From Magallana gigas (lineage: Eukaryota), in contig NC_088855.1 of the NCBI RefSeq assembly GCF_963853765.1, positions 9,300,001-9,364,000 on the forward strand: 64,000 nucleotides of DNA, written 5' to 3'. The notes under the pieces are model-generated. The model was not told the DNA's origin, ran no database searches, and saw only the letters and a program-made list of their open reading frames with translations. Shown here in pieces: positions 23,294 through 55,902 of this stretch. The position numbers and the translations under genes are program-made. Each line of letters opens with the position of its first letter. Positions within the stretch are counted from its first letter, which is position 1.

Positions 23294-25148
23294 TCATACA
23301 TAAAAGTTGTATTTCATGAAGTGTAACTGGTGTTCACAGAACTTCCATAGAGGATAACTTGTTTTGTTAAGTTCCTGTGCAGTCATAGGTTCTCCGTGAT
23401 GTGTAACAACTGCATCGATCATCATTATCTAATAAACACAAAAATACTTTTAATGTTAATGATTTTATACACTCCATCTAATAAGTAAAATATACTACAT
23501 GTATCAATAATACATATTTTGATATAAGTTGCAAGGTTTGTAGCTGACCTGATATAGCATTGGTTATAAGTGATCAGTAAATACCACATGCGACAGTGTC
23601 CCCTGTAAGATTCACAGACCATGGTGATGAAAGTTAACATATTAGGTCAACTACAAACCATATTCATCTGTTTATGTCATATAGAATTACAACTAAAACG
23701 TTTAAGAATTCTTCAAGGTCATAGTGCTCATAAGGAATTTACTCTTGTGCACTTAATGTGAAGCGAACGAATGTTTTCTTTTTAAGTGCCAGTGTTTAGG
23801 CAAGAGATTTTGTGTTTGTGTGTATATACAAGGGTCATTCTTATAGTAGTTACAATATTTACACAAAAACGATAATATATATAAACCTTCTACCTCTACT
23901 TTGAACTCCCCGGATGTACTGTGTATGTCGTGCCTCTGTCTGTCTGTCAGTTTGTAGACATGGCACGTATCGTTAGGGGAAACCTTGAAGCTACTTCTCA
24001 TAATAGCAACCCCCTACAAAGGAGTATGCCATCAGGTATTATCATACAGAGAATACTTAGCATGGTTTTTCCAACACATGCAATATACCTTAATTGTATT
24101 TATCACACCTTGCAGTTGTATCCCTCCGTGTATATCACGGTATATAAACAGCAAAACTCCCCATAAAAAATCTCAGCATCGGTATAAGAATATTTCCTTT
24201 GACTATATATAGTTTACTATAAAGGAAATATTTCTCCATGCATATTATAATTCACCTTCAAATTTTTTTACGATATTCTGTCTATTGATTGTTGATCCTT
24301 GTTGATGGAAACATATTTCGTACGTGACATTCTACACACAAGCAATTGAAATAAAACACACAAAATGCCAATTGAGATCACGAATTATTGTTTCCCAATT
24401 TAATTCTACAATAAGGTATAATTCCGTTTATTTCATTGATAGTTATTTTCTTTTGAAACATTATTGTATCATTTTTTCTCTAAAGTCGGCAGTTAATTCA
24501 TATTGATGCGTTTATACAAGTAATAAGAAACCAGTCTTTAAGTATCATAAGTTGATCAAATACCGTCGGGAGTGATCAAATATGAGCCTAATGATAGATT
24601 TGATCACGCCTGATCGTATTTGATCTCCCCCTAGTATTAGATATTTAAAGAATGATCCCTATTACTTATAACTATATAATTTTCAGTTATTGTATGATAT
24701 ATGAAATACTAATGGAAGAAATGTATTGGATTTAACATTACAAAATCCTGTGGAGTAGTGTTATCATTAGGACAATGGAAAATGAAAATATTTAGAGATA
24801 CAACCAACCAGGCTTTACAGATGGCATGGAATGAAAAGGGGCAGATAAATGGGAAAATTTCATGTAGAACGACATACCGGCGCAGGGTCGTACTTGAAAG
24901 TCCAGCCCAATGATAAAAATGGTTCCTGTGTGACATGGACAAAAGTGCAAGATATGACTGAAATTTATAAAATTTTCTCTTAGCAAAACGTCCAAAGTTT
25001 CTTTTTATTTTGTAAAACTGCAAGACTTAGTCTGCAACACTTGCTTGCTATACAATTATCATTATTTTTTTATATCAAGATACATCTTATACGGAAACTT
25101 ACCACTCGCTGAAAGCAATGCGAGAAGAAATGACGGTGTCAAGTACAT
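23294..25148 (-). CDS. Small secreted protein, paralog A (126 aa, 4 exons), BRICHOS-like by inference
   Basis: Exons 25148-25103 (46 nt, G|GTAAGT), 24957-24878 (80 nt, |GTATGT), 24013-23894 (120 nt), 23428-23294 (135 nt, TGA). Protein MYLTPSFLLALLSASVISC-TFVHVTQEPFLSLGWTFKYDPAPGVAIMRSSFKVSPNDTCHVYKLTDRQRHDIHSTSGEFKVEIMMIDAVVTHHGEPMTAQELNKTSYPLWKFCEHQLHFMKYNFYV. Intron phases and the sizes of exons 1, 3 and 4 match paralogs B and C. Confidence 0.85.
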
Positions 25149-25719
25149 AATTCTTCACCTGTTGCGGTTTACTTTATGCACCTGTAGTGACTTATAATTA
25201 CATAAGCAATAGATAACGTCTATGTACATTTCTAGAACAAATCGTGCTTCGACGGTACTATACTATAGACTTCATGTACTTCTTAACCAATCTGTGGGAA
25301 TCAAAACAAACAAACGTGGCCTACAAGATATTTCCATTTCCAAATTTTGTTATCAAATCCTACACTGAGCAAAAGGACATGTATATCCCAGTTTATTTAT
25401 TAAACATATAATTTGCTAAAATTTAATTGCCATTAGATATTACCACATAACATGTTTGATATATAACCATTAAACACCAAGGCTTTTTAGAAAAAAAAGT
25501 GTAAGATCGTTTTCAAAACAATTTAAATAAAGAATTTAACCAATATAGATGGTTTCAATATTTTGTTTCCTTCTTAAAAAGTCCTTTTAACCGTGTAAAT
25601 ATTTTGTCACCAAACGAAAAAAATACAAGTCGAAGCAAAATATTATAAAAGTAAAAATTGACAAAGAAAAAAAAGAATGACGTAACTCTTGTGGGGGAAA
25701 TTTTATTTACAGTTTACAG

Positions 25720-28680
25720 AAGTTACAGAAAACACGTGTGCTTAAGCTTGTTTTAAATTAAGTGGGTGTGTCGATATTACATATCAATTGGCTGTGTACG
25801 GGAGTTTACGTGTGAATTGGGTGATTTAATCCGTGCTACGCATGACTTGGACATGTATAAAGAAGAATTTGGTTTTTTTAAGTTATTCGAAGTTCGATGC
25901 CACTTTGCAACAGACTACGAAAATCTAATTCTATGTCGTCGATGCAGACTACAGAATTCCTGGCTGAAATTAGACACCAGCCTATTGGCGACTCTATTCT
26001 TGTCGAGCCTTCCAATCTTACGGCACCAGGAATTTCAAACACAGCGCCCAACAGACCAGAAGCCACGTCGGTTAATACGTTATTGCTGATACGTGTAACC
26101 TGTTCGAATTCCAAACTTGAGAACCTGAAGGACCAGCTTTCAGCTGGCAATGACTTTGACACTCTTTAGCTTAGCAAATAAAGAAAGAAGTATCCGTTAA
26201 CATTAATCACGAAGGGAACAAAATTAAGTTCCATTTCAATTCAGAAATATTGAGTGACTTACCGAAATTACAGAAACGTTTGTCTGTTAAAAATTCATTA
26301 TCTGCCAGTAATGTTTCTTCTTACATAACCAAGTTATCTAGGAGAAACAAACTCATTCGCATTGCGGACAAGTCTCCGGCCGGTTTGACAACAGTGCAGG
26401 AATATGAAAGTGACGACCTCGCCTCTGACTCGGACGATGAGATGCGCATGCCCCAAGCTGATAACCGTGCACTCCGCACGCTTAGAGAGAGACGGCGCTA
26501 CAAGAAACCCTCTGCAACTGTTTCTACTCCTTCTGACGATCGTAGTCCTGCTCGTACGTCTTTTCAGCGTTCCATTCGTCTTTACACAAAGCAACGAAGA
26601 CAATTCTCGCCATACGATATCTGCTACAATTGCCAAAAATACGGACACTGGAAATCCCAGTGCACAGCGCCTTCAGTCCAGTGTTGACTTTAACAAATAG
26701 ATCTGTAGAGAAATATGTTGATAAAAAAAATCGCTTTTGGATGATAAAATAAAGTTGGTTTTTTAAGCATATTGCTTATTTTGAAAATAGTTCTGTTTGC
26801 AGCAAAGGCGTCAAAGGCAGTCTGGCAAAAAAAAGTATTGGCAGGTATTGGAGCTAGCGAGTTCGTTACTGACATTATAAAAAATGGCTACGTTGTTCCT
26901 TTTCAGAGACCTCCTCCTCTAATGAATTTCAAGAACAACAAATCTGCTCTTGACAATGTTGAATTTCTAGAACAATCTATTAAAGATCGTTTGGAAAACG
27001 GTTGTATAGAAAAAGTTTCTTTTCAGCCTTTTGTTGTCAGTCCACTAACTGTTGCACATAACAAAGGTTCAGGTAAAAAGAGACATATATAAGATTTGAG
27101 CGAATTAAACAATTTTGTAGATAAGAACAAAGTTAAGTTTGAGGACTGGAATGTTGCTTTAATTTTTTTCTTTGTAAACAGCTTACTTATTTTGCTTTTT
27201 ATTGGAAGGGTCAGTATTTATTTATTGTTTCAACGTTTTAGTAAATGGTTTCACTTCCGCTCCATATATTTTTTACAAAATGCTTGAGCCCATTGGTTAA
27301 ACACTGGAGAACCCATGGCTTAGATATTGTTTCATAACTAGACGATGGGCTGGGGTTCGGTAAAAATTATGAAATCACACGGAAAGCTTCAAACAATTCT
27401 CTAATGCAAGCTGGGTTATTGATAAATAAAGAAAAGTCAAATTTTCAGCCCATGCAGTCCATAGAGTGGCTTGGTTTGCTGTGGGACTCGAAGAGTTATT
27501 CTTTATTCATTCCGAACAGAAGAATAGAAGAAGTTCAGTCGACTTTGAATTTTCTGATTAATTCTTTTCCTCATTTTACAGCTCGAGGACTAGCAAAGTT
27601 TGCCAGACAGATATTTAATTATCTCATGCTTATGGTTGTGTTTTCAGCTTAATGACGAGAAATATTTATTTAGCTGTAGAGAGCCGTGGTCATTGGGATC
27701 ATCTAATGAATCTTGCATTTCCAGATTTGGTTAAAACAGAGTATACGAGTGAGAATTCTGGACAAATAACTTGGTAAAAATGAATTATAAACATTTGCTT
27801 GCAGAATCTTTGTCTTCTGAGTTAGTGTTTTCAGATGCTAGCAACGTTGCAGCAGGAGCATATACGGTTGTAGTTGAGGAAAATATCGTACATCATACGT
27901 GGTCAAAATCCGAGTCATTGATGAGCTCTACGTGGAGAGAGTTAAAAGCAAATGATTAAGCATTGAATTACTTTGCAGTTTCTTTATCTGGAAAAGCAGA
28001 AAATGGCACATAGATAACCAACACTGTGTCACAATTGTTCAAAAAAGTAGCACAAAGCCTCATTTACAGAATTTAGCTTTTTACATATTCTCCAAGTGTG
28101 TCGAGTTGGCTACTTCATTTAGCATAGTTTTGATTCCAAAATAGGACAGTCCAAAAGCTGATTATTTATCAAATGTTATTGATTTTGATGATTGGCAAAC
28201 TACTGATGAGTTTTTTTTAATTTATAGACGGCATGTGGGGTCCAAACACAGTGGATCGATTCGCTAGCGCTCAAAATGCTAAATTACAGACTCGGCGATT
28301 TATTTCATTGTTTTAATATTCAAATTCTGAAGCTGTCGATTTGTTTTTACAGTCTTAGCATTTTAAAAATAATTGATTATTCCTCCAATTAACTTAGTTA
28401 GCAGAGTGATCAAGCATACTGCAGAGCTATTGGAAGTCTTTTTGTGCCAAAGTGGCCCTCCGCTCCTTTTTGGACACTGCTGTTCGATGTAAAATTGAAA
28501 TGAAGAGAGAATGTTACTGACGTATTAGAATTTGCGCCATATTTTTATGGCTGAACTGGTGAATAAGAACATAAATATATTTATAAAAGTTACATAAAAC
28601 ACGTGTGTTTGTTTGGAATTAAGTGGGCGTGTGGATATTACATATCGATCGGCTGTTTACGGGTGAATAGGGTGATTTAA
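25720..28680 (+). mobile_element. Degenerate DIRS-order (Ngaro/PAT-like) retrotransposon: gag, RT/RNase H and methyltransferase-like remnants between direct repeats
   Basis: Gag pieces 25897-26687 with RNKLIRIADKSPAG..VQEYESDDLASDSDDE and the CCHC knuckle CYNCQKYGHWKSQC (26622-26663). RT pieces from 26772; the catalytic YLDD reads TAA-CTA-GAC-GAT (27335-27346). RNase H FSDAS...SSTWRELKA at 27771-27959. WGP.TVDRFA and VPKWPSAPFW-like remnants at about 28230-28480. Roughly 100-bp direct repeats at 25720-25829 and 28587-28680. Many stops and frameshifts. Confidence 0.85.
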
Positions 28681-28716
28681 GTGAAAATTAACCTGAATTT
28701 TACTTTACTTTAAATA

Positions 28717-28987
28717 CTAGACTTTGACCCGTGCGACACACCGTCTTGTTGACTTTTACATAACCAAGCTTTAAGCCTACAATAATACTATTAAGGTATT
28801 CAATGTATAATGAGGGAAATAATTAGCGAAGCTTGATTGAGAAAAAATAAAAACAAATTGGTAATATCAAGTACCAATGATGTTTTAAATATATATACAA
28901 AACACAGTACACTTCCGATTAAAGCCGGTTAAGTAAAGTATTAAAAACCCAAAATTCAAGTCTATTATTTTAATATAGTAGTATAGA
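28717..28987 (-). mobile_element. Complete short non-autonomous Helitron (271 bp)
   Basis: The minus strand starts TCTATACTACTATATTAAAATAATAGAC and ends with a degenerate hairpin plus CTAG. It is inserted between A (28716) and T (28988) with no target-site duplication. Confidence 0.75.
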
Positions 28988-39671: not shown

Positions 39672-41645
39672 GTTACATGTTTATGTCTATAAAATCCTTT
39701 AAAAAAACAAAAGGTTGTTTCGATCAACAGTCAGCCGTTTTGTGATGATGTGTTATTCCACCTTAAATTATAAATATTTCCGTTGAAAGAGTAATTTTTT
39801 TTACCGGCGACAGAATGATTGTACATATCAAGACATTTTTATTGATAATTATTCATACATATAAAACATCACTACAATACTAATTGCAGTATTTAATTCA
39901 AAAATATTTACCGATACTGACAAAATTGTAGGATTCCAAAAAGATCGCCTGCATTGCGGTTATTTCCCTTTTCATAGCTCTAACGTTACATTAAAGAGGT
40001 TTGTTCCTCTGTTTTTGGATAGCTATTTTGTGTCACCTTTATTCTGGAAATTATGCATCATATATTGATTCTACTCATAAAGTCATGTTTTATAATGCCA
40101 ATTAAACTATATTTAAAAAAAATAGTAAAGGAAAAAAAACATATTTACAGAGGTGAGTATGGAACTATATTTTGTGGCGAAAGATTTTGGAAAGGAAATG
40201 GACATTTTTCATAACTCAGTTGTTTTAGAGTACCGTCACTTTAGCTTCCCTTTTTTCAGTGCAAACAAGGGTTCCAGATAGTTTGTGCATTGGGATATCT
40301 TTGTTTCGTTACGACAAACATATTTTTACAATTTTTTAATATTTCTATCGACACATATAAGTAAATTTTACTTATATTTTATTAAAGTCAAGGAAAAATG
40401 AATCCTAATTTTGGCCTAAAATTAGCTTATTTCATGCTATATCTCAAATTTTACATTGTAGATACATACTTTTGGTTTAATTTTCTGAAATTTTTTCTGA
40501 CAAGTTTATCATAATTTGAGAAAAAAGTTTGAAACTTTTAAATAAAGTCATTACATGTTGAATCGTTAATGGATTAAAAAATAGTTTTATCAGTGCAAAA
40601 AGGTCAAAATATTAATTAGGCGAAGAAATTGTTACAATTTTTTTATGATGATTTTAATTTTATTTATTTTAAATAGTATAAATTTGGGTTTATTTCTATA
40701 ATTACATACATGTAGGTATTTCTTGACTAGTGTTATCATATAAGAACTGAAACGAACGTGACCTACACGATATTTACAGTTGTCAGTTTCTTCTAAAAAA
40801 AAAATTACAAAGCAAGTAAGATACATGTATATGCGTAGGATTTATTTTATCGGGGTAAAGCATAGAATTTGCACAAATTTAGCAGCCTTTGTTGATAACT
40901 ACAGTCGTATATATTGTTATTTGATATATTGCTATTGTAGCGTGTTATCAACTGGGTTCATGGAATAGGGTATCATAATATTAAATATTTTCCTTAAGTC
41001 TACCTGGGTATCAATGATTTGTTTTTAAAATAATAATAACTATAGGGTGAGGTGTGTGAACGGAATTTATAAAACTCTATTACTAAAGTTTAACACATTT
41101 GTGGGGAGTTATCGCTAGTAAAGGGAGGAATTGTACAACCACGCAAATGTACCTATCCCCAACGGATACACCCAGAGCGTGAATGGGGATAGAATTAAAC
41201 GAAATATTTTAGTTTAAAGTGGTTTTTAACGATATAAATAAATATTTGGTCTCTATAATTACATGTTTATTCCTGAATAATTTATTTCCCTGCACAATAT
41301 TTTCATTTTGCGAGGGATGCTCCGCTTTACAGTGTCCTTATGTTCTTCAACAGGATGCATACAGAGGACAAGGCACATATAGTTAATATATGTATATATT
41401 AACTATTGCGTATTTAAAAAGGCGTTCAAACTTTTCTCTATCATAAATGCATTGCCATAATTTAGGATTTGGATAAATTAATATGCATAAAAACAGTTCT
41501 AACCAGCCATAAAAGATGCTTTTAGAACTGTATATATGCAATCAGCACCTACAACATGTATATACACAATGCATGTCCATTGCTTATGGGTCTCTATGAT
41601 ATCTTTTCTCTAATTAACAAACGCTGCACAGAGCGGCTGACTTTG

Positions 41646-44600
41646 TTATATATAGAAGTTATATTTCATAAAGTTCAGGTTCTTTTGACAAAATCTCCAT
41701 AATTGATTGCTTGTAGCGTTCAGTTCGGTTGCTGTCATTCTTTCCCCGTGCTCCGTTCTAATTGCTTCATACATCATGATCTGCACAGAGGAAAATGTGT
41801 AGCATATTAAAAATAGCACTTGTAAAATCATCTAATCTATAGAAGCATTACTGTCAAAGTGATGATAGCACTCTTAATGTTAACAACGCTTTAGAAATGC
41901 ATTTCCAATGATCGACCAATATTTGAATGTCAGTGGTAGAGTTATAGGCAAGAGCGTGTTTCCTGTGTTTGTTTACATTCAATTTGGTTTAATGTACCAG
42001 TAAAATTTCATTTTTAAGCGCATTTCTCTCTTTCTCCCTTAAGCTTAGATTTAATAATTCCTAGCTTTAAATACCTTCAATTTAGGTCTTCAACTGGAAT
42101 TTTCACTCAAATGTTCAACATTCAAAGCGTAAACAAAATAGACGTTGGGTTTGCTTACATTACACAGAATTATCTGCTGTGTGCTTCGCTTATATCACGA
42201 AATAGAAAACTCAAAGTTTTGCTGACTATTAGAAATACCCCCTCAACGGCAATTAATTAGAATTTTTTTTAAGTCCAAGGGGCATAACTCTGTCGGAAGG
42301 TGCTCCATCGTATCCAAAATCAAACTTGATATTATCATGATAAATCTTTATTCTAAATTTTATTTCAATAAGTGTGTTAACCTCTGCAAAAAAAAAAGAA
42401 AAGAATGGAAACTGCAAATAATTGGAATTTGTGTAAGTCCAAGGGGTATAACTCTGTCGAAAATTGCTCGATCGTAACCAAAATCAAAATGAAAGGTAAT
42501 AATTATGATAAATCTGTATACTAAATGTTATTTCAATACGGTATGTGCAACCTCTGCGAAGAAAATAAACGGAAACTGTTAGTGGACAGACGGACAGCAG
42601 CAGAGCAATATGCCCTCCCTTCTTCTAAGGGGCCGTAAAGATGGAAAATAATTCTTGACCAAAATCTTGACGATCCCCCATTAAAACAAACGACCTAAAT
42701 GTCAAAACATTATTCTGCAACAAATTATTATACAAAAACAATTTTTCAATTAAGAAATAATTACACTTCGTTACTTAACGCAACTGAACAAGTCGTAGCA
42801 ATTTTTGCATTCATTTGATAAATATTGTCAAAGCAAATTAGGCAAAAAACACAACAAAATAAGCAAACGAGAAAAACAACTCTTTAAAGGGGATTTCATA
42901 TTGATAAGGATATTACCTCTACTCTGAATTGACCAGAGATAGTGTGGATATCGTGTCTCTGCTGGTCTGTCAGCTTGAAGACATGGCACGTGTCATTAGG
43001 CTTTCTTTGGTAATTGCTTCTGGTGGCCGCTATGCCCTTATGAATAATGATAGCAAAAAGTTTATACACCAGAATAAACATGGACACTTTCGCATACTCA
43101 TGCTAAAATTGTTTGCACATAACTGCATTTTCCAGTGTTTTTTTTAATCATTAGTCCAATGTGAGAATTTTGACAGTCTAATATTCTCTTACATGTAACC
43201 ATGATATCATTTTTAACTTGTAATCAAATAAAGAACCTTCACAAGAAATTTTCCAAGGTTTTTATTATTGTCAAATAGGTCTATAGGCAACGTATGTTTC
43301 ATTAAGATATTGTAAAAAGTAATTCAACATTTATACAAATATCTTGGTAAATATATGCATAAGCTTCCCTTCTTATTAAAATATGAGTTATTAAACATTT
43401 ACCGTAGATATTTTCTCAAAATTTAAAACATTTTCTACTTTTTTATCAAGAGAAGATAACTCATAAGAAAAGTTTAAAGTGCAAAATGACCTGCTTCTTA
43501 CATGCTGTCAATCAGGTTAGTTTGGTTTATTTCACTTTCATTGTCATTAAGCAGTAAATATCAAACCAATTAAAGTTTCAAAATTTCATATACATGTACC
43601 TTTAATGTACATTTAAATCTGTAAATGCATGCACACTTTATATATAAAGATTTATAAAATAATATTTAGTCTGTTAATGTTACACAGTTACTTGATTTAA
43701 ATTCCATGTTTATCCCGCACCTGTAAAATTTTCATTTCACTGTGTAAAATCCACACCGATTTCTCAAAATTACACAGATTTAAGAGAGTCGGATGGTCGT
43801 AGACATTTTTAGACTTTATTGATCTCCTTAGGAATGAAATCTTTGTTACATTAAACATGAAAACATCTCCCAATTTAAAGTAAATTTTCGTAAGATTTCT
43901 TTTTAATAAGTACTAGTCTATGGTTAAAATATCATTTCTAGAAATGTTAATGTATACATGTATCTAATACTTTAGGAGACTGGGTGGTCATCAAAATTAA
44001 CTATCAGTTCTACCTTAATTTATTTTAAGTTATTTCTTTAGCTATATAAACTTTATCTTTATATATATTTTATATATCTTTACTTAATGATATAGGTTAT
44101 GGTTTGAACATATTTTATTGCATAAACATACACAACTTGTGTTCGAACCAGTTGTATATGTTTATGCAATTAAATATGTTCAAACCGTAAACTACATTGT
44201 ATATCATTCAGAAAAGAAACATTCTATCTTGAATTCCCCGGGTGGCAGGAAATACAAAATTTACAACATTACAAACTTTTGTGTTTATTGCCACCCGGTA
44301 GATTCAATATTTACAGCATTAGTTTTCCAAGTATTTGAAATGAAAATGAAATGTTTTTTCTATATCTTTTTTTTCTGTATGGTCTAAAATAAATGACCGT
44401 TCAGTTTTCTAAAAAAAAAAACATATTTCAAAATTACTCTGTTATACAGGAGTTTGCATACTCAAATGTTCTCTGATAATTTACCACTAGTATGTCTTGT
44501 ATCAAAATTTAATTTTAGATAAAAAATGCCAGATCCAAAACATGTCAATAAATCAGTTTTAGTTTTATGGGAATTGCCTTTTAATCATTGTAATCCTTTT

Positions 44601-44852
44601 CCCGCGAATCTTTTCTGTGTATTACCTTGTGTTGATCATATTGGAAGATCAAAGCCGCCGCGAAACTAGGGTCACCATGAATGTTGACAAACGTAGCGGA
44701 TATGAAACAAACTGAAATATAAGTATTCACGAAGGCAGTATTGTCAATAGAGTAATGGAAAATTTATTGTGGCATACTCCTTAAGATTAAATTTGAATTT
44801 ACTCACCCCAAATCGTTAAAACTGAAATTAACAACCAATGGTGCATATCCAT
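41646..44852 (-). CDS. Small secreted protein, paralog B (128 aa, 4 exons), BRICHOS-like by inference
   Basis: Exons 44852-44807 (G|GTGAGT), 44711-44626 (AAG|GTAATA), 43036-42917 (AAG acceptor; GAG|GTAATA), 41780-41646 (TAA). Protein MDMHHWLLISVLTIWVCFISA-TFVNIHGDPSFAAALIFQYDQHKGIAATRSNYQRKPNDTCHVFKLTDQQRHDIHTISGQFRVEIMMYEAIRTEHGERMTATELNATSNQLWRFCQKNLNFMKYNFYI. Confidence 0.85.
42270..42640. mobile_element. HINE-like element with two ~160-bp units inside intron 3 of paralog B
   Basis: AAGTCCAAGGGG(C/T)ATAACTCTGTCG occurs twice, followed by the GGACAGACGGACAG microsatellite and a hairpin-like end ATATGCCCTCCCTTCTTCTAAGGGGCCGTAAA. Confidence 0.7.
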
Positions 44853-45959
44853 ACTGACAACTTGGGTTGATGAACTCTTTAGACTGTCAGGAGAATATTC
44901 TCCCTCGGTGATAAGATAAGACCATTCTCGCTAGATTTACACAATAATTTGATGCCAAAAATGGCTGGAGATATAATTATGCATAAATATTTATTGGAAA
45001 TATCCAACAATAGGGAGTCTTCATAGCATAAAAATTTATTTCGTCTTCAATTGTTTGAACGTATTTTATTACTAGATGTTGATAACAAAATGATTAGGCA
45101 AACTATCTGAAATCTTAGATCGCATGAACTCTCCCATAAAATCATCTATTACGCAAAATTATGCTCAATATTTAAACACAGTAGTCTCAAAGGTCGATAT
45201 AGTTTACATGTATTATTTATTGTCAGGTTGTCTTTAATGAAAACAGTATTCAGATATATACTTTATTGTTTTCTTGGACTGTGTATGTTAAAATCGGGGG
45301 TAACAAAACAGGATTTTACAAGTTTAGAAAGTCTATTGTATTTCAGAACTAAAAACTTAGACAAAACGAAATTTTATGGTGTTCCTTATCGACCATTATG
45401 AGACCACCATATAAATACATGGATCCAGTTTTCTTCGGTCTATTGTTTGTAACCCCATAAAGAATAAAGAAAGATTTTTTTTACTCTGTATGTTTTGTGT
45501 TTGTTTGGTTGTTTGTTTGTTTGTTTGGTGTGGGTTTTTCTGGGGGGGGGGGTTGCAATGTAGAATTATAATATTTTACATATTTTTCTTAAAATGTTTT
45601 CACTCTGCATGTAAAATGTACTGTTGTCTTTGAATACACTAAAATGAATACATAGGAAAGAAGAAGTAGAGCAAAAAATTGTTCCTCTAAACAGATACTT
45701 TATATCCTCAACATGTATAAAATAAATAGATCGAATTCTCAACAAAAACCAATTCAACACTTCACTGAAACGTAACCAAATATGAAGTTTTGTTGTCATT
45801 TTGGTGATAAAATAAGAAAATACAAATGAATTGATAAGATAAGATACCGCCTTATACTTTTAAATTAGATTGCTGTAAAGGTACATTTAAGTAAAAATAA
45901 TTGATTTTTTTTAAATTAGAATACTAGTATCCAATAGGATTGGTATTTACAAGGCAACC

Positions 45960-47086: not shown

Positions 47087-50000
47087 TTACACATAGAAAT
47101 TGTATTTCAAAAAGTTCAGGTTCTTTTGACAAAATCTCCACATTTGATTGCTTGTAGCATTCAGTTCAGTTGCGGTCATCCTTTCCCCATGCTCCGTTCT
47201 GATTGCTTCATACATCATGATCTGTAAAGATAAAAATGTTTTTGTATAAATAAAATTTGACAAAGCAAATCAGAAAAAAACAAACTAATCAAAGAAGAAA
47301 TCATATCGATAATGATTTTACCTCCACTTTGAATTGACCAGAGATAGTGTGGATATCGTGTCTCTGCTGGTCTGTCAGCTTGAAGACATGACACGTGTCA
47401 TTAGGCTTTGTTTGGTAATTGTTTCTGGTGGCCACTATGCCCTGATGAATAATGATAACAAAAAGTTTAAGCACCAGAATAAACATGGACACTTTCGAAT
47501 ACTTATACTAGAATTGTTTGCACATTAACTGCATTTTCAAGGGTTTTTTTTAAATTCATGATGCCACTGTAAGGTTGATTTTATTCGTAATTTGTCGAAC
47601 TCCTCATTGTTATTCTCTTTAACATGATATCATTTTTAACTTATTCTGAAATAAAGAAACTATACACAAGAAATTTCTAAAAGTTTTTATTATTGTCCAA
47701 ATTATAATTAATTGCTGCTTTTATTTACACTGAAGTCTATAGGCAAGGCATGTTTTATTAAGATATTGTAAAAAGTAACTCAATATTTATGCGAATATTT
47801 TGGTAAATATATGCATAAACGTTCTTTGTATTAAAATATGAATTGTAATTTAACAGCGGATATTTTGTAAAAATTTAAAATTTTCTACTTTTCATAAAGG
47901 GAAGATAACTCCTAACAAAATTTTAAAGTGCAAAATAATGGTCTCTTATATGTTGTCGAACAGGCGATTTTGTCACTTTCATTGTCATTTTGCAGTAAAT
48001 ATCTAGCTTATTTAAAGTCTCAAAATTCAAAACACCTTAAATATACATTTAAATCTGTAAACTTACACTTCGATTTATAAGATAATATTTACAGATTTGG
48101 GCGTAAAACTCATGCACTTATTTGTAACTTTCATGTTTTAAATCTGTGAATGTTATACACTTATTTGTTTTAAATTCCACGTATATCCCGCGCCTGTAAA
48201 ACTTTCATTCCACTATATAAAATCTTCACCGATTTCTCTAAATTATACAGATTTAAGAGAGTCGGATGGTCGTAGACATTTTTAGACTTTATTGATTTCC
48301 TTAAAACTGAGAGCTTTGTTTAATTATACAGGGAAACATCTCCCAATTTAAAGTTGAAGTTCGTAAGATTTCTTTATAATAAGTACTAGTCTATGGCTAA
48401 AATATCATTTCTAAAAAATGTTAATGTATACAAATGTACATGTATCTAATACTTTAGGAGACTGGGTGGTCATCAAAATTAACTATCAGTTCTACCTTAA
48501 GGATGACGTTTACTCAGAATGAAAAAAAAATCCACTGATGATAATGAAAAACCAACTATTGTGTGTTATAGACCTTACATGGTAGTGTTATTCTTCACTT
48601 TCAAAAAAGTAGGTCAATGACCTACTTTTTGAGTTAATGACCATTGAATATTTTTGGGAAATTCGAGAAAAATCCATAAAAATTTTACACTATGATTCAG
48701 ATTTTTTTAATTGTGAAAATAATACAAATTGCTCAACTCTTTAACAAATGAAATACAGTTTATGAATGGTAGTGACATTAAATAGATACAAATCATGAAG
48801 TTATCATTCACAATTTCTATAGATATTCTAGTCCGAATTTCCTCTGTCAGTTTTCAAATTACTACCCATTTTTGATTCAATATAACAAAAAACTGAATGA
48901 TGATAATGCTAAAACATTTATAGTATTAAACTAAGTATATTGACCTTTCTCTGCTGGTATAAAATTTATATGAGGTCAATGATAAAAATTTTGAGATATG
49001 GTGTCTTTTATCATTTTTAAGCATTTTTCAATATTTTTGTAGTGTGTGCCATACGATTATCTAAACGAAAAAGCAAGATAAAACCAACAGAAAATATGCA
49101 AAATTTTGTTGACTAACAAATAAAATCTTAACTTTAAATATCATAGTACTACCAAAAATATTTCAGTGGAAAACAGAATCTGAAAAATTTAGTCCGAATT
49201 TCCTGTTTTGCTAAAAGTCAAACTTTGTCGGAACCTAATTCCATAATCTAGTAAAAATATCGATTGTTATATTAATAATAATTCATTTCATAAATACTTT
49301 TTGTATTTAAAACAAATTTTACTCATGAAATTGAACTTTTCAACAATCCGGATTTGAGAACTCAAACCCTGAGTAAACAATGTCCTTAATATCGTTTTAG
49401 TGAATTCTTTAGCTACATATATAAACTATGTCATTCAGTAAAGAAATACTATATCATGAATTCCCCGGGTGACAGTAAATACAAAATTTACAACATTACA
49501 AACTTTTGTGTTCACTGCCACCCGGTAAATTCAAAATTTACAGTATAACTTTCATGTATTTTGAATTAAAAGTTTTAATGTTTTTCTATATCTTTATTTT
49601 CTGTCTGGTCTAAAATAAATGCACGACCATTCAGTTTTCTTAAAAACACATCTCAAAATTACTCTGCTATACGGGAGTTTGCATACTCAAATATTATCCG
49701 ATAATATATCACGAGTATGTCTTGTTTCAAAATTCGAAATTGGAGTCGGTATTATATTAAGATACTGTACATTACATTGTATTTCGTACATATTTTTGTT
49801 GAAAAGCAATATCATTTATAAATGTTGATTATAACCAGGTATGATAAAAGTGTACATTAAATGTAATTAATTGTGATTAAAGGGGAGAGGGGTTAAAATG
49901 CTATAAATAAAAGATAATACATGTACTCGTATATATACATGTGTATTTATTATTTTTGCAAACATTTAACCTTGCGCAATGTAAACATTATGATAGCAAT

Positions 50001-53000
50001 GTCACCACAGGAAAAAAGGGAGATATTGACCACATTAAAATGGTATAGGAAATGTAAGTTAACTATTTGCATAGGTGACACTCAATGGCTCGAACTTCAA
50101 TCTCTAGAAGTTCTTGATTTCTCGAAGTGAAATCAGGGTCCCTTTTTTCTCTATATAACTAAGCCGGCAAATTTACTCTTCATCTCTCGAATTCCGATCT
50201 CTCGAAGTTCTTGATCTCTCGAAGTCAAACCTGAGTCCCGTTATACATATTCCATTGTTCTTCACTCTTGATAACTCGAAATGGTTGCTGTGTACACACG
50301 CGTCTAATTATAGCTCCACGTGGACCTTACTTGGATGGTCGAGTGAACGCCTGGGGGCTAGCGTGGGATTGTTAATTGGTTGATTACGTAAATGACACTA
50401 TCCTTTGCTTCCTTCAAAGGCTAGATAGGTAATTTGTAACTGATCTATTAATTTTAACAACTTGTAAAAGTTACAGTACGCATATATGTATGGTAAATTA
50501 AACTTCTCTTTTATTTTTAAATAATACACTGTGATTAGGAAAAAGTTAAAACTTAACAATTTTTGAAATGAAAAGGAAAACACTTAATAAATAAACGAAC
50601 AACTAAGTTCTGTACTGTTTAAATTGAAGTAATGTAGCAGAAAAAACGAATGAAACCATGATAGACTATCCATCCATGTTATGAAAATAGACTTCCGGCT
50701 ACTGTAATTTTAGAACCAAAATGACTCGAACAAAGATTTCCGGACTTATTTAACTTCCGATCTCTCGAGCTCTTGATCTTTCGAAGTTTAATCATGGTCC
50801 CCTTAAGTTTGAGTTTTCGACATTCACCTTTACACACCTCACAGCCTACTCAATATTCAGGGTCATGAACCCTGGGGAGCATTCATTATTGTCCCCAAGA
50901 GAGACAACTCTTGAAAACGTACATTAACTATAGTCCGTTTCTTAATCTTATTAAAATAAATAAATTGAGAAAAGTTTTCAAAGTATTTTAATTATAAATA
51001 ATACATATAACCATGAGTAAAAGGCATGAAAGAAGTAGATTTATTTATCAAATATAGTAGGCTGGTACATGTACCCGGTGAATATTAAATGTATATTGCT
51101 TGTGGGTACATGTATAAATCTACACAACTACATTCAATTAATAAATACACTGTGTTATGTAAACTGAAAAAAAAATACACAGGTTGTAAGGGATCTTTTT
51201 TAAAATGAATTTTCTTAAAATGAAAAATAAATTAATGAAATTGCACATATCATTCTAAAAGAAAATCATTATACTAATAGACACGAAGTTCAACATAAAT
51301 AAAGTGAGATGGATAGGATATAATGTACAGCAATTTAAGATTTAGATGTCATTTTTCATATGAAAGGTAATTAAAACTCCATACCATTTAAACAATGAAA
51401 AGGTTGCAGAAGGCCTATTTGTATCTAGTTGAATATAATGAAAATAAATCAATGACCTTGTATACATCATTTTAAGAAAAAAAAGAAATAAACATGCTGT
51501 TCAAGAAACTAAAGTGATATATTTTAGGAATCAATAGGATATACTGTACAGCAATTTTAATTATATTTTGGATTTGTTTCCAAACATTGGAATAAAGGGA
51601 AAAAAAACTTTTATAACTTATTTAGATTAAAAAATATTCTTAAAAAATATTAATATTTGTATTTCATGGCTAAATCTGAATATTTTTCTGTCAATTTCTT
51701 CTGTTCAAGAATAAGACCTATCCTTTTATCAGACACTTTTATATATATTATGTCTATTTTCCATTGTAACTAAGTATTTTTTGTTCTGTTTGTATACAAA
51801 ACAGTATATTCAAGGGACTTAGACACGATTTGAGCTTAAAATTCAAAATTTTATATTTCCATTTTCAATATTTAGAATGGTTGATATGGGTATTTTTAAT
51901 GCTTTGTCAAAATTTGAAAGTCAAATACTGAGTTAAAAGAAAGATAATTTTTTTTATATTTTTTGTTTTGTAAACAAAGCGCAAGTCTTGTTATAATTTA
52001 CATATGTGTTTTATTGGTGTAAGTTTAATTCAAATGTTGCTTTTTTCTATTAATAATATCATTTATGATCACATCAAATCAGTTTACCTTCTTTTCTATG
52101 AATCATTTTCTCAAAGAATTGGTAATTTCATACTTTATATTATTTGTAAGCAAACATAAGACTCGAGCTTTGTTTACATAACAATAAATTCTTACCCCTG
52201 TATCTCTCTTATACCTTGACTTCTAACATTCAATTTATGGTCAATTATTCAAAATGTGCAAGTAAATCATTTTATGCATAAAGAAATTGAAAACAAAATT
52301 TTGATCGTGTCCAAGTCCCTTTAAAAAAAACTTGTATAAAATAGTAAGGCTAAATTCCAATTTAAAAAAAAATAGCTGTTTCCAAAAATGTTACATGTAT
52401 ATGAATATGTTATATAAAAACATATGTTAGATGGATGGGTAGGAAAAATACAAATTACCGGTAAGTGCACTCGATAAAAAGTTTGCTGGTTTCATTATGT
52501 GAACACAATTCATCCAGTAACATTTAAAGTTATGCAACATAAATAAGAATGTTATGAATGATGTGTATACAACAAATTCTTCTGTGGTTGGCTCCATAGA
52601 TCTTGAAAAGATGGTGTGAGTTGGTAAAAAGGCAGAATAAGGTTCCATTCTAATCCTCATGCATTCCATTCAAGAAATATTCATTAATGTCATGGTCTGG
52701 AAACTAAAATAGAATAAACATAAAGTGTTAAGAGAATTACATGTAATTTTTGCAAACATTGTGCACTCATCAAATACTTACATGTACATATTCAATGAAG
52801 TTATTTATGTGCTATTACTAACAATGTAATCTTTTCTAATATTGTACATACATGTATTACATCAGTTTGCCATTAATTTTAAACCCAGCTGACAGTTTCT
52901 TTTTGTTATATATACAGCGTCAAAAGATAGTTGCTTCATGTGCATATACTTTCAGTAATTTTAAAAGCCATAAAAACATTTCAGTACTTCAAAACACTTT

Positions 53001-53984
53001 AAATTTGTCAAATGATTTTACAAATGAAATATGTACTAATATACCAGTAAGTCACAAGTGATATATACTTTTTAAAGCAGTACAATGTATCACTTATATG
53101 ACAACATCAGGAAACCTGGCTCAATCAATTCTGCACACACATGATAAATGTAATGAATGTGTAACTTCAATGGTGTAACTTCAAAGATATTTAGATATCC
53201 AGTGGACCGATAGATATTAAATATATTGAACAAAGATCAAAGTCATAAACACTTATGTAACACTTATGTAACATATGATTGTCTGTATGAGTTTCAACTA
53301 TCAACATTCTATGTACACCAAAATATGATTTTGTCAATAACAAAAACTAATCTGAAAAACATATTTCCAGCATAAGAAATTCATGGGATTTCTGCAAATC
53401 CCATTTTCTCAGAGAGTGTAAAACACATCTCTTAAAGTTTATAATATTTTCAAACTCCTGGTATTCCTTTCAGAGGTTCCCACCCCTTAAAATACAGATA
53501 ATCAAGCAGATTTGCAACAAGATGCCCATATAAACCTTTCCCTTTTACACAAGACATTGTAGCTATTTAGATGACCTTGTTTGGCTTTCAATCAACTTAA
53601 ACCAAATATATCTACAGTACATATGGAAGACAAGTTGTAAGTTTATTACATGACAAAGAAGTACCTTCTGGGCTTCAGCAGACATGACTGGGTCATTAGC
53701 AATATCAAATTGACAATATTTTCTATAATCCCGATCTTCAGATCATCTGGAAACCGCAGGTAAATCTGTAGATTAGAAGAAAAAAGATACACTAGCTATC
53801 ATTACAAAGCTAAATGCTGTCATTATCAAAACAAAAGGGTGTGTCCTAGATTACATTTTTTTATGGGCACATGCAGTTTCTGAGACATAGTCAAAACATT
53901 ACCATGATAACAGCTATAACAACTCATTAAGTGGGAAATGACATATAACTATAAAATTTGTTATGGCTTTTCATACTCTCTCTC

Positions 53985-54028
<44 letters not shown>

Positions 54029-54145
54029 ATCTCTCTCAACATCTTTGTCAGCAATATTTCTAGTGCAATGTGGCATTATTGAAATATATATATGGTTCAT
54101 GGAAGCAAGGCAATCAATAACAATTACATGTACACTTTAATTACA

Positions 54146-54176
<31 letters not shown>

Positions 54177-55902
54177 TCTCTGAGTCTATCTCTCTCTCAT
54201 ACTCTCAATCGTATAATGTTATATTTAGATAACAAATGCAGGCCTTTGAATCATAAACACTCTCATCGTTAATAGATGAATAAGACATAAAGTTAACAGT
54301 TTGAATAAAATACAGATATCAAAACCACATGTACTACATGGTGTACATTATACGTGTCGAGGAAATTCTGTATGGAAATGACTGAGAGCATGATTGACAC
54401 AAACTCAATATTCTAGGAAAAACATACAATATTTTCTAACGTATGCTACGTATCAATATGTGTAAAAACTGACTATAATACACCTGCATACACATTTCAT
54501 ACTAAAACATGTCTTTCAAGTCACATTTCACAACGACCATTAATTATCGACATTTTTGTAACATGTGTACTAGACTTAATGCATTGTATGCTTTTAAAAG
54601 AGTTTTTGAGTAGTTTAACAATGTAAGTAAGTATGTTCTTACCGACGAATGACTACTCCTTAGCACGTTTTAGATTGTTGACAAAATCGAGGATTGCTGT
54701 TCAGACTGTTTCATGCTGAACAACATTTAACGAGATAAGGCTAATCACCCCAAACTTCGACTTCACATTAATAAACAATTGTTCTGCAACTTTAAATAAT
54801 TTAAAAGCTTGCCAATATAAGAAACAAAAACTTTTACTTACGTTTTCCATTTAAACTCCTCTCTCGATTTTCACGAGTGTTAGACTGGTCTCATTAAAAT
54901 CCCGAGATATACGAAGTTTTGACTTTCTTGGGTTTTTTCATTCTTTCGTGAATATAAAAATCAGAAAGGTTCCGATTATGCTAATAAGGCTGTGAGGTGT
55001 GCTTTATATAGTACTGAACCATAGCCGTACCATAAAAATAGATTTGTCCGATACACTTCAGTGATTTTTTTCTTCATAAGGTGATTAATTTGTATGTAAA
55101 ATTATAGATTTATATATTAGAGTTTTATTTTAACGTATCAATGTATAAAATTTACAATGTAATATCTATTTTTTCAAATTAATTAAAGGAGGTTGGATCG
55201 TTAACAAATTAATCGTCAGATTAAACAAAAAATCTTAAAACATGGTTTGTTTAGCTATAAACTAGTATTTAGTAAAGAAAAGCATATATCTTACACAACA
55301 CACAACACATATCTTACATGTATCTTTTAACTTTTGTATTTTTTTTATAATTTTATATAGAACTCATCTTTTTAGGAGATCAATTCTGTCTAAAAATGGT
55401 CACAACCATCAAATCCTCTTTAATTCGTGGAAATTAAGAGATTTCAATGTGACACAAATCTATCTTTTGTATATGAAATATCTGAAGACGTTTTAAAAAC
55501 ATTACAATTGTAGAATGAAACGTAGATAATAATGTCTACAATAGGTCATCAGATGCAGAACATGCCGATGAATTAGTTTGTTTCATGGGAATTGCCTTTT
55601 AATCATTTTCATCCTTTTCCCGATTGTTTTTCTGTGCATTACCTTGTGTTGATCATATTGGTAGACCCAAGACGCCCCGAAACTAGGTTCGCCGTGAATA
55701 TTGACAAACGTAGCGGATATGAAACAAACTGAAATAAATAGTATTCACTTAGGCGGTATTGTCAATGGAGTATAAATGGTAAATATTTAGTGGAATACTC
55801 TTTTTAAGATTAAATTTGCAATATTTGATATAATTGATTTTCTTAAATTTACTCACTCCAGATCGCTAAAATTGAAATAAACAACCAATGGTGCGAATCC
55901 AT
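47087..55902 (-). CDS. Small secreted protein, paralog C (128 aa, 4 exons), BRICHOS-like by inference; intron 2 is 8.2 kb
   Basis: Exons 55902-55857, 55728-55643, 47441-47322, 47221-47087, all GT-AG. Protein MDSHHWLFISILAIWICFISA-TFVNIHGEPSFGASWVYQYDQHKGIVATRNNYQTKPNDTCHVFKLTDQQRHDIHTISGQFKVEIMMYEAIRTEHGERMTATELNATSNQMWRFCQKNLNFLKYNFYV. 110/128 aa identical to B by hand count, with synonymous changes and no indels in the exons. Confidence 0.82.
48501..49385. mobile_element. 885-bp non-autonomous TTAA-targeting element (Kolobok-type)
   Basis: TTAA|GGATGACGTTTACTCAG...CTGAGTAAACAATGTCC|TTAA. The empty site is visible in the duplicated segment near 44025 (CTACCTTAA). Confidence 0.85.
50072..50829. 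mobile_element. Degenerate MITE-like element with subterminal (AT)CTCTCGAAGT repeats
   Basis: Clusters of GATCTCTCGAAGT-like motifs at 50085-50280 and 50755-50815; weak inverted ends (AGGTGA.. / ..TTCACCT). Confidence 0.45.
51813..52320 (+). mobile_element. TTAA-type MITE (Kolobok-type), copy 3
   Basis: AGGGACTTAGACACGATTT...ATCGTGTCCAAGTCCCT|TTAA; left flank is TTCA; interior is colinear with copy 1. Confidence 0.8.
53975..54200 (+). repeat. Two (CT)n microsatellite tracts
   Basis: Direct reading at about 53975-54025 and 54146-54200. Confidence 0.9.

What the first reader, a model, noticed from the sequence alone, without database searches (positions are those of the whole stretch)
23294..55902. 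Hidden three-gene family of small secreted two-cysteine proteins (BRICHOS-like)
Seen in sequence: three minus-strand genes share exon sizes (46/80-86/120/135 nt) and intron phases (1,0,0). Each has a signal-peptide-like N-terminus, an F/Y-x-Y-D motif, a C-x53-C pair, a conserved KLTD.QRHDIH..SG.F.VEIMM core, two conserved sequons (NDT, N-A/K-T) and a shared KYNFY end. By hand count B/C are about 86% identical and A/C about 60% over exons 3-4, with intact frames, which implies purifying selection. Established: BRICHOS domains have one disulfide with similar spacing and occur in gastrokines and annelid antimicrobial peptide precursors. Inference: this is a compact stand-alone BRICHOS-like family with no C-terminal client peptide, possibly acting in mucosa, defence or as a chaperone. 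The ORF track shows only fragments of it.
Basis: partly seen in the sequence, partly recalled or inferred. Interest (0 to 1): 0.85.

Follow-up and report, generated by a model that had tools for sequence, protein, structure and literature searches.

The report
Oyster secreted BRICHOS-like three-gene cluster
Three neighbouring Pacific-oyster genes, listed in databases only as "uncharacterized", encode small secreted proteins that are probably a stripped-down form of the BRICHOS anti-aggregation chaperone domain with no built-in client; their function is untested.

Summary
Three minus-strand four-exon genes have exons of 46, 80 or 86, 120 and 135 nt, GT-AG introns and phases 1,0,0. They encode proteins of 126, 128 and 128 aa.

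They are not hidden. B and C are letter for letter RefSeq XP_011453321.1 and XP_011453322.3 of Magallana (Crassostrea) gigas. A matches XP_011430266.1 at 124 of 126 residues. All are named "uncharacterized protein". Spliced RNA contigs confirm the six junctions of A and B. No transcript was found for C.

Selection is purifying: B/C dN/dS is 0.28, and A against B/C has pN 0.30 with pS 0.83-0.87. By sequence the family was found only in oysters, with the same intron positions and the same GPCR neighbour.

The BRICHOS reading is partly supported. No member matches Pfam PF04089, and my AlphaFold models were too poor to use. However, ESM Atlas feature searches rank gastrokine and proSP-C BRICHOS clusters as the top named hits. 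The Atlas model of a 50%-identical member aligns to a gastrokine-2 BRICHOS cluster at TM 0.63/0.58, against at most 0.40 for the next rows. The three BRICHOS invariants (Asp, Cys, Cys) are invariant here. The protein ends 13 residues after the second Cys, so it has no C-terminal client.

This scan has already noted other divergent BRICHOS-like secreted families elsewhere in this genome.

The parts
22458..25166 (-). Gene A (M. gigas LOC105330335), transcript extent seen in RNA contigs. The last exon carries a 3'UTR of about 840 nt.
   Evidence: L008/L009/L010 align in four blocks at 96-100% identity. The protein matches P0001 (XP_011430266.1) at 124 of 126 residues.
25103..25148 (-). Gene A exon 1 coding part (46 nt, ATG at 25148, donor GTAAGT, phase 1)
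24878..24957 (-). Gene A exon 2 (80 nt): end of the signal segment, linker and the F-K-Y-D motif
23894..24013 (-). Gene A exon 3 (120 nt): NDTC, first Cys, KLTDRQRHDIH core
23294..23428 (-). Gene A exon 4 coding part (135 nt with stop): second sequon, second Cys, KYNFYV end
40653..44863 (-). Gene B (LOC105346455), transcript extent seen in an RNA contig. The 3'UTR is longer than 1 kb.
   Evidence: L011 aligns in four blocks at 97-99% identity. The protein is identical to P0029 (XP_011453321.1).
44807..44852 (-). Gene B exon 1 coding part (46 nt)
44626..44711 (-). Gene B exon 2 (86 nt)
42917..43036 (-). Gene B exon 3 (120 nt)
41646..41780 (-). Gene B exon 4 coding part (135 nt with stop)
55857..55902 (-). 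Gene C (LOC105346456) exon 1 coding part (46 nt)
   Evidence: The whole model is identical to P0009 (XP_011453322.3).
55643..55728 (-). Gene C exon 2 (86 nt), followed by an 8.2 kb intron
47322..47441 (-). Gene C exon 3 (120 nt), followed by a 100 nt intron
47087..47221 (-). Gene C exon 4 coding part (135 nt with stop)

Best explanation
The region holds a tandem cluster of three paralogous, intact genes of the Pacific oyster: LOC105330335 (A), LOC105346455 (B) and LOC105346456 (C). A and B are shown to be transcribed.

Each gene encodes a precursor of 126-128 aa. It starts with a hydrophobic segment of about 20 residues that ends in [IVLF]-S-[A/C/G]. I read this as a cleaved signal peptide (inferred). 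The mature chain is about 107 residues and is a single domain.

[quoted passage not shown] It has the invariant Asp (D41) at the end of a strand. It has one disulfide between C61, in the strand CHV[FY]K, and C115, at the end of helix 2. It has two mostly conserved N-glycosylation sequons, N58 and N105. The bond and the glycans are inferred.

The chain ends 13 residues after the second Cys, and there is no furin site. So it carries no C-terminal aggregation-prone client, unlike nearly all BRICHOS proproteins.

The most likely mode of action (inferred, untested) is a secreted, ATP-independent binder and chaperone acting in trans. It would trap exposed beta-strand-prone segments of other extracellular proteins on its sheet face. 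The Asp, and possibly the invariant His/Asp/Glu cluster (H62, H72, D73, H75, H95, E97), would act as a pH or metal switch.

The A-type and B/C-type lineages are old, because they are shared by Crassostrea, Ostrea and Saccostrea. The B/C duplication is specific to Magallana.
For: Gene models and expression:
- Splice sites are canonical and phases are conserved.
- The models are exactly or nearly identical to RefSeq proteins.
- Spliced RNA contigs cover A and B.

Selection and family:
- Selection is purifying.
- There are only three copies in the genome.
- Family members occur in C. virginica, O. edulis and Saccostrea.
- Intron positions are the same in C. virginica and O. edulis, and the tandem layout beside an orthologous GPCR is shared with C. 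virginica; O. edulis also has a 7tm_1 GPCR gene upstream of its copy.

Secretory features:
- The mature chain has exactly two Cys in all 11 members checked.
- A/C/G alternate at the putative -1 site.
- The NDT sequon is invariant.

BRICHOS evidence:
- The Atlas feature search with P0009 gave a GKN1 BRICHOS cluster at 0.91 with 197 of 256 shared features, and 16 of 30 hits in that set.
- The domain-only search with P0013 gave proSP-C-like at 0.88 and GKN2 at 0.87 and 0.85.
- The Atlas model of P0013 (pLDDT 0.73) matches a GKN2 BRICHOS cluster at TM 0.63/0.58 over 89 aa. Unrelated rows score 0.40 or less.
- D41, C61 and C115 are invariant. They correspond to the only three residues conserved across BRICHOS (PMC2751770, PMC10182729).
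- The predicted order of elements is beta 35-41 (ending on D41), beta 45-50, beta 60-63 (with C61), helix 68-74, beta 80-84, helix 101-116 (with C115), beta 123-126 (low confidence). This is the BRICHOS order described in PMC9714404.
Against: - No Pfam PF04089 hit at E <= 10 for any of 11 members or for any exon.
- The six-frame PF04089 scan of the genome does not pick these genes.
- The family profile finds no solved BRICHOS sequence.
- hhalign against an oyster ITM2-like BRICHOS exon lines up the Cys strand, but at a probability of only 0.35%.
- Both AlphaFold2 runs failed (pLDDT 48 and 45). Their fold searches were empty.
- The structural support therefore rests on one ESM model of a 50%-identical paralogue, compared with another predicted model.
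- The Asp-to-Cys1 spacing is 20 residues, against 16 in ITM2A (D144-C160, PMC2751770).
- Signal-peptide cleavage, the disulfide, glycosylation and any chaperone activity are untested.
- No transcript was found for gene C.
Confidence: 0.6

Rival explanations
1. An oyster-restricted orphan family of small secreted glycoproteins whose fold is unrelated to BRICHOS. On this reading the Asp/Cys/Cys pattern and the Atlas similarities are coincidental or convergent.
For: - No HMM-level similarity to PF04089 or to solved BRICHOS chains.
- hhalign was negligible.
- AlphaFold2 could not fold it.
- By sequence the family was found only in Ostreidae.
- The Atlas tool's own calibration says shuffled proteins reach 0.9 in 4-10% of cases.
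Against: - Two different members, one of them without its signal segment, both rank BRICHOS clusters first among named hits.
- A structural match of TM 0.63/0.58 stands far above the next rows at 0.40 or less.
- All three superfamily invariants are present, and the element order matches.
Confidence: 0.22
2. A proSP-C-like arrangement. The N-terminal hydrophobic segment is not cleaved but serves as a membrane anchor, and is itself the aggregation-prone client of the BRICHOS-like domain.
For: - Like proSP-C, the protein ends just after the last strand and lacks a C-terminal region (PMC10182729).
- The best named feature hit for the domain alone is a proSP-C-like cluster at 0.88.
- The hydrophobic stretch is 16-19 residues long and rich in Ile, Val and Phe.
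Against: - The stretch before the hydrophobic segment is only 2-6 residues and lacks Lys/Arg in all but one of the 11 members.
- The hydrophobic segment is the least conserved part of the protein, whereas the proSP-C segment is about 96% conserved (PMC2751770).
- [IVLF]-S-[A/C/G] followed by TFV fits the -3/-1 rule for signal peptidase.
Confidence: 0.08
3. A precursor of an antimicrobial peptide, like the polychaete BRICHOS-AMP precursors (arenicin, alvinellacin, capitellacin).
For: BRICHOS-AMP precursors occur in marine lophotrochozoans (PMC9756803), and the domain here is BRICHOS-like.
Against: - There is no sequence after the domain, no furin site and no Cys-rich C-terminal hairpin.
- The mature chain has only two Cys.
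Confidence: 0.03

Closest known systems
Gastrokines (GKN1/GKN2/GKN3; BRICHOS, Pfam PF04089)
   Same: - Small secreted proteins made of a signal peptide and a single BRICHOS domain.
- They are the nearest named clusters by Atlas features (0.91, 0.87, 0.85) and by predicted structure (TM 0.63/0.58).
- They share the invariant Asp and the Cys pair.
   Different: - Gastrokines are vertebrate proteins with a C-terminal region after the domain. That region has two Cys that are strictly conserved in nearly all BRICHOS families (PMC2751770). The oyster proteins stop 13 residues after Cys2.
- There is no HMM-level sequence similarity.
- The Asp-to-Cys1 spacing is 20 residues, not the 16 seen in ITM2A (PMC2751770).
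proSP-C (SFTPC) BRICHOS, PDB 2YAD
   Same: - It is the only known BRICHOS proprotein without a C-terminal client region (PMC10182729).
- Its domain is also the last element of the chain.
- It is the top named feature hit for the domain alone.
   Different: - proSP-C is a type II membrane protein whose conserved poly-Val helix is the client.
- Here the N-terminal hydrophobic segment is variable and looks like a cleaved signal peptide.
- No sequence match to 2YAD.
OAF (out at first), a remote BRICHOS member (PMC9714404)
   Same: - It was recognised as BRICHOS only through predicted structures and profile-profile comparison.
- OAF clusters also appear among the Atlas feature hits.
   Different: OAF has a long C-terminal mature polypeptide rich in disulfides, and it occurs widely across animals. 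This family has no such region and was found only in oysters.
Other divergent BRICHOS-like secreted families noted by this scan in the same oyster genome (s1-380931, s1-361657)
   Same: - Small secreted proteins, one of them encoded by a four-exon gene.
- Listed only as uncharacterized.
- Read as having a divergent BRICHOS core.
   Different: - Those carry His-rich tails or peptides, which this family lacks.
- Profile searches of the whole genome with this family find only the three genes here, so any kinship lies below sequence detection.
- I did not examine those loci.

Membership tests
BRICHOS (Pfam PF04089) | Significant match to the family profile | tested here: not met
   - No PF04089 hit at E <= 10 for the nine exon translations.
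- None for four full-length members or for all 11 members of A3.
- The six-frame PF04089 scan of the genome finds only an ITM2-like exon on another contig.
BRICHOS (Pfam PF04089) | Strictly conserved Asp before the first Cys, at the end of a beta-strand | tested here: met
   - D41 is invariant in 11 members, within W36-x-Y-x-Y-D.
- It ends a predicted strand, residues 35-41, in the second AlphaFold model (low confidence).
- Its spacing to Cys1 is 20 residues, against 16 in ITM2A (PMC2751770).
BRICHOS (Pfam PF04089) | Two strictly conserved Cys, one in a sheet strand and one in helix 2 | tested here: met
   - C61 and C115 are invariant and are the only Cys in the mature chain of all members.
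- C61 lies in predicted strand 60-63 and C115 in predicted helix 101-116 (low confidence).
- They are 54 positions apart, against 59 in ITM2A (PMC2751770).
BRICHOS (Pfam PF04089) | The two Cys form an intramolecular disulfide | not testable with these tools
   This needs mass spectrometry or a structure. No usable model coordinates were obtained.
BRICHOS (Pfam PF04089) | Fold: central beta-sheet flanked by two helices | tested here: met
   - The ESM Atlas model of P0013 (50% identical to gene C's protein; pLDDT 0.73, pTM 0.63) aligns to a GKN2 cluster in which 98% of members carry PF04089.
- The match is TM 0.63/0.58 over 89 aa, and the next non-family rows are 0.40 or less.
- Both sides of that comparison are predicted models.
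- My own AlphaFold2 models were unusable.
BRICHOS (Pfam PF04089) | Profile-to-profile significance against BRICHOS subfamilies (as used for OAF, PMC9714404) | tested here: inconclusive
   The only possible test was against one oyster BRICHOS exon (L007). The Cys strand aligned (DTCHVFKLT against RSCYIMKLD), but at probability 0.35%. No BRICHOS alignment was available by reference.
BRICHOS (Pfam PF04089) | N-terminal signal peptide or signal anchor | tested here: met
   A hydrophobic segment of 16-19 residues begins within 7 residues of the start. [IVLF]-S-[A/C/G] precedes a conserved TFV. SignalP was not available.
BRICHOS (Pfam PF04089) | C-terminal aggregation-prone region or mature peptide after a convertase site | tested here: not met
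   The chain ends 13 residues after C115. There is no RXXR site and there are no further Cys.
Gastrokine subfamily | C-terminal region after the BRICHOS domain, with two further conserved Cys | tested here: not met
   Absent. Conservation of those two Cys across nearly all BRICHOS families is reported in PMC2751770.
proSP-C subfamily | Highly conserved N-terminal transmembrane client helix with a cytosolic propeptide | tested here: not met
   The hydrophobic segment is the most variable part of the alignment, and only 2-6 residues precede it.
BRICHOS-AMP precursors (polychaetes) | Cys-rich beta-hairpin peptide C-terminal to the domain | tested here: not met
   There is no C-terminal extension. 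The family description is from PMC9756803.

The most novel reading that the evidence does not exclude
These are the first stand-alone, client-less BRICHOS proteins. On this reading a minimal 107-residue secreted BRICHOS domain works purely in trans in oyster extracellular fluid or mucus, on aggregation-prone or amyloid-like host or microbial proteins. Its invariant His/Asp/Glu cluster (H62, H72, D73, H75, H95, E97) would add a pH or Zn/Cu switch. That would make it a natural minimal model for BRICHOS chaperone action without a cis client.
Probability: 0.2. Interest if true: 0.65.

Novelty: new variant of a known kind. Interest (0 to 1): 0.42.

Why it matters
BRICHOS domains are studied as anti-amyloid chaperones. 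Reviews state that every known family carries its own aggregation-prone client in the same proprotein, and that proSP-C is the only family whose client is not C-terminal (PMC10182729).

A secreted protein that is nothing but a BRICHOS domain would be a natural test of whether the domain evolved to act in trans. It would also extend the superfamily into sequence space that Pfam does not reach, as happened with OAF (PMC9714404).

For oyster biology, it gives a structural hypothesis for three conserved genes that are at present only called "uncharacterized". The gain is modest for three reasons:
- The genes are already annotated.
- The fold assignment rests on predictions.
- The scan has already met other divergent BRICHOS-like families in this genome.

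Tried and rejected
- **Pfam, exon by exon and on full-length database members.** No BRICHOS hit. The only hits were sub-threshold noise: MRJP, DUF1198 and Adeno_E3_14_5.
- **Family profile against PDB sequences.** Only noise at E above 1.
- **AlphaFold2, run twice.** The full-length run used 11 sequences and the mature domain used 13. Mean pLDDT was 48.2 and 44.7.
- **hhalign against the oyster ITM2-like BRICHOS exon.** Negligible.
- **Search for more copies.** The exon and profile scans of the whole genome find only these three genes. A weak exon-3-like tblastn match at window 13093-13191 (-), E 0.17-1.8, shows no family motifs on reading and is taken as chance.
- **Search for relatives outside oysters.** None by sequence.
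- **Transcript look-up for gene C, by exact protein.** Nothing on record.
- **Literature searches.** Searches for the LOC, XP and UniProt identifiers, the SRA runs, and gastrokine together with Crassostrea found nothing relevant.
- **Readings rejected.** The AMP-precursor reading fails because there is no C-terminal peptide. The pseudogene or chance-ORF reading fails because of the transcripts and the purifying selection.
- **Joined models.** The joined models were built only inside local scripts.
Full report
**What is there.**
Reading the minus strand between 23.2 and 56 kb shows three sets of four short coding exons. I fixed the exon borders from the DNA.

| Gene | Exon 1 | Exon 2 | Exon 3 | Exon 4 (with stop) | Protein |
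|---|---|---|---|---|---|
| A | 25148-25103 | 24957-24878 (80 nt) | 24013-23894 | 23428-23294 | 126 aa |
| B | 44852-44807 | 44711-44626 (86 nt) | 43036-42917 | 41780-41646 | 128 aa |
| C | 55902-55857 | 55728-55643 (86 nt) | 47441-47322 | 47221-47087 | 128 aa |

- All nine introns begin with GT and end with AG, and the phases are 1,0,0 in each gene.
- Intron lengths differ widely: A has 145, 864 and 465 nt; B has 95, 1589 and 1136 nt; C has 128, 8201 and 100 nt.
- B and C are tandem duplicates with alignable introns and flanks (78-84% identity).
These are [FY]-x-Y-D, C-x53-C, the KLTD.QRHDIH..SG.F.VE|IMM core, the NDT and N-x-T sequons, and the KYNFY end.

**How the spliced models were handled.**
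I searched the models exon by exon, by reference. I assembled the joined models only inside local scripts. There I translated them, compared the paralogues and checked identity with database proteins. All full-length analyses used database proteins, by id, that the exon searches had returned.

**The genes are real and expressed, and they are not hidden.**
- An exon-3 search returned full-length oyster proteins. Cluster look-ups then gave their accessions.
- Gene C's model is identical to P0009, XP_011453322.3 [Magallana gigas].
- Gene B's model is identical to P0029, XP_011453321.1 (LOC105346455). That sequence is also XP_052718523.1 of C. angulata.
- Gene A differs at 2 of 126 residues from P0001, XP_011430266.1 (LOC105330335).
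- All are named "uncharacterized protein" and have no precomputed Pfam domain. The window is therefore M. gigas or a very close relative.
- Four short contigs assembled from public sequencing runs carry the uninterrupted reading frames. These are L008-L010 from SRR4419956, SRR8485193 and SRR4419972 for A, and L011 from SRR4419969 for B.
- Those contigs align to the window in exactly the four predicted blocks. They extend the last exons by 0.84 kb (A) and more than 1 kb (B) of 3'UTR. Six of the nine junctions are thus confirmed by spliced RNA.
- Gene C has only the RefSeq model. No transcript with exactly its product is on record.

**Selection and history.**
- B and C are 85.9% identical in protein and 90.9% in coding DNA, with dS 0.24 and dN/dS 0.28.
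- A against B or C is 51-53% identical in protein. Synonymous sites are saturated (pS 0.83-0.87), but pN is only 0.30.
- Whole-genome scans with exon 3, exon 4 and the family profile find only these three genes in 564 Mb.
- By sequence, the family appears only in oysters. C. virginica has four members, O. edulis has three, and Saccostrea cucullata and S. echinata also have members.
- C. virginica has three tandem copies and O. edulis two. Their coding breaks fall at the same residues, about 16, 44 and 84.
- In both species a rhodopsin-type GPCR gene lies upstream of the copies. The C. virginica one is 84% identical to the GPCR at window 57061-58341. The O. edulis one runs off the end of the fetched locus and was not matched.
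- A maximum-likelihood tree separates three types:
  - An A type, which groups M. gigas A with C. virginica LOC111138189.
  - A B/C type, which was duplicated independently in Magallana (support 100/99) and in C. virginica (95/93).
  - A divergent third type (C. virginica LOC111128881 and O. edulis LOC125657923), with no counterpart found in this genome.

**The protein.**
- The first 19-23 residues are hydrophobic and are the least conserved part of the alignment.
- This segment ends in [IVLF]-S-[A/C/G] before a conserved TFV.
- Small residues alternating at that position is what a signal-peptidase -1 site looks like. It also explains why the Cys there is not conserved.
- After that site every member has exactly two Cys (C61 and C115). 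Each has a mature chain of 107-109 residues (about 12.7 kDa) and a pI of 5.8-8.6. The sequon N58-D-T directly before C61 is invariant, and a second sequon near N105 is present in 10 of 11 members.
- Cleavage, glycosylation and the disulfide are inferences.
- 35 positions are invariant. They include W36, Y40, D41, the block N58-D-T-C-H-V, K65-L-T, R71-H-D-I-H75, G79, H95-G-E97, C115 and K123-Y-N-F-Y127.

**Is it BRICHOS? Evidence against, or uninformative.**
- No exon and none of the 11 members reaches PF04089 even at E <= 10.
- The six-frame PF04089 scan of the genome picks only an ITM2-like exon elsewhere.
- The family profile finds no solved BRICHOS chain.
- hhalign against that oyster BRICHOS exon aligns DTCHVFKLT with RSCYIMKLD, which is the right strand, but without significance.
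- Two AlphaFold2 runs on shallow, oyster-only alignments gave pLDDT 48 and 45. The searches made with them returned nothing.

**Is it BRICHOS? Evidence for.**
- The ESM Atlas feature search with gene C's protein puts a mollusc cluster first, probably its own family. Next comes a GKN1 cluster in which 91% of members carry PF04089, with score 0.91 and 197 of 256 shared features. Sixteen of the 30 hits fall in that set.
- I repeated the search with a member only 50% identical (P0013) and without its signal segment. The three best named clusters were again all BRICHOS: proSP-C-like at 0.88, and GKN2 at 0.87 and 0.85.
- The Atlas holds a usable model of P0013 (pLDDT 0.73, pTM 0.63).
  - Its nearest structures are three mollusc "hypothetical protein" clusters (TM 0.70-0.77).
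  - Next is a GKN2 BRICHOS cluster at TM 0.63 by query and 0.58 by target, over 89 residues spanning 31-124.
  - Every following row is 0.40 or less.
- The only three residues conserved across the BRICHOS superfamily are one Asp and two Cys (PMC2751770, PMC10182729). Here D41, C61 and C115 are invariant.
- The secondary-structure elements from the two weak models, taken together, run in this order:
  - strand 35-41, ending on D41
  - strand 45-50
  - strand 60-63, with C61
  - helix 68-74
  - strand 80-84
  - helix 101-116, with C115
  - strand 123-126
- That is the BRICHOS order. It has the Asp at the end of strand 2 and the disulfide between strand 4 and helix 2 (PMC9714404).
- I put the BRICHOS fold at about 0.75. 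Membership by sequence profile was tested and not met.

**What differs from known BRICHOS proteins.**
- Of the five features listed for the family in PMC9714404, three are present or consistent: the N-terminal signal or anchor, the conserved Asp, and the Cys pair.
- Two are absent: the convertase site and the C-terminal mature hairpin.
- The chain ends 13 residues after C115.
- Reviews name proSP-C as the only BRICHOS proprotein without a C-terminal client, and there the client is the conserved transmembrane helix (PMC10182729).
- Here the hydrophobic N-terminus is variable and looks cleaved. The mature protein would then be a BRICHOS domain and nothing else.

**Likely mechanism (inferred).**
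- The precursor enters the ER, the signal peptide is cut before TFV, and the domain folds.
- It forms the C61-C115 bond, is glycosylated at N58 and usually near N105, and is secreted.
- With no cis client, it would act in trans. It would bind exposed beta-prone segments on the sheet face, as other BRICHOS domains do with non-native clients (PMC10182729). D41 would act as the pH-sensitive residue (PMC9627735).
- The invariant His/Asp/Glu cluster is unexplained. A pH or metal switch is a guess.
- Tissue, inducibility and partners are unknown. I could not obtain metadata for the RNA runs.

**Rivals.**
- An unrelated orphan fold (0.22).
- A proSP-C-like uncleaved anchor that serves as the client (0.08).
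- An AMP precursor (0.03, contradicted by the missing C-terminal peptide).
- A chance or pseudogene reading is excluded.

**Novelty.**
- The genes themselves are already annotated.
- Neither their source names nor their precomputed Pfam assignments mention BRICHOS, and no paper in the searched library mentions these loci.
- Earlier notes of this scan describe other divergent BRICHOS-like secreted families elsewhere in the same genome (s1-380931, s1-361657). I did not examine them, and my profile scans do not reach them. They may correspond to the other mollusc clusters seen.
- I class this as a new variant of a known kind and rate it as of moderate interest.

Noticed in passing
window 57061-58341 (-): A single-exon rhodopsin-type GPCR (426-aa ORF, PF00001, E 7e-31) lies just upstream of gene C. 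It is 84% identical to the GPCR beside the orthologous three-gene cluster in C. virginica (L012). There it points away from the cluster, but here it is on the same strand. This suggests a local inversion.
   Followed up: partly
window 26250-28500 (+): Retroelement-like ORFs lie between genes A and B. One is a gag-like ORF with a CCHC zinc knuckle (PF00098, E 4e-6). Further broken ORFs follow downstream, and the two of them that were scanned gave no Pfam hit.
   Followed up: partly
window 30074-31350 (-): A run of frame-broken ORFs that looks like a decayed DNA-transposon transposase. The one ORF scanned had no Pfam hit.
   Followed up: partly
window 41798-42861 and 47222-47321: Intron 3 is 1136 nt in gene B but only 100 nt in gene C. 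B carries about 1.06 kb with no counterpart in C. Conversely, intron 2 is 8.2 kb in C and 1.6 kb in B.
   Followed up: partly
window about 22520-23100 (-) and 50198-50827 (+): Part of gene A's 3'UTR, as seen in the RNA contigs, is 65-75% similar to a stretch inside intron 2 of gene C, in the opposite orientation. This is probably a dispersed repeat.
   Followed up: no
L013:20373-24204 (O. edulis) and C. virginica LOC111128881: A third, more divergent subfamily exists (P0013, P0014). In O. edulis it sits directly downstream of the B/C-type gene. No counterpart was found anywhere in this genome.
   Followed up: partly
window 53940-54230: A (GA)n/(CT)n-type simple repeat, which reads as ERERER and SLSLSL in the ORF list.
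   Followed up: no
G000:C8:5620775-5620891 (L007): The only exon in the genome that the PF04089 six-frame scan picked (27.3 bits). It reads ...AIVDYDKRSCYIMKLD... and looks like an ITM2-like BRICHOS gene.
   Followed up: partly
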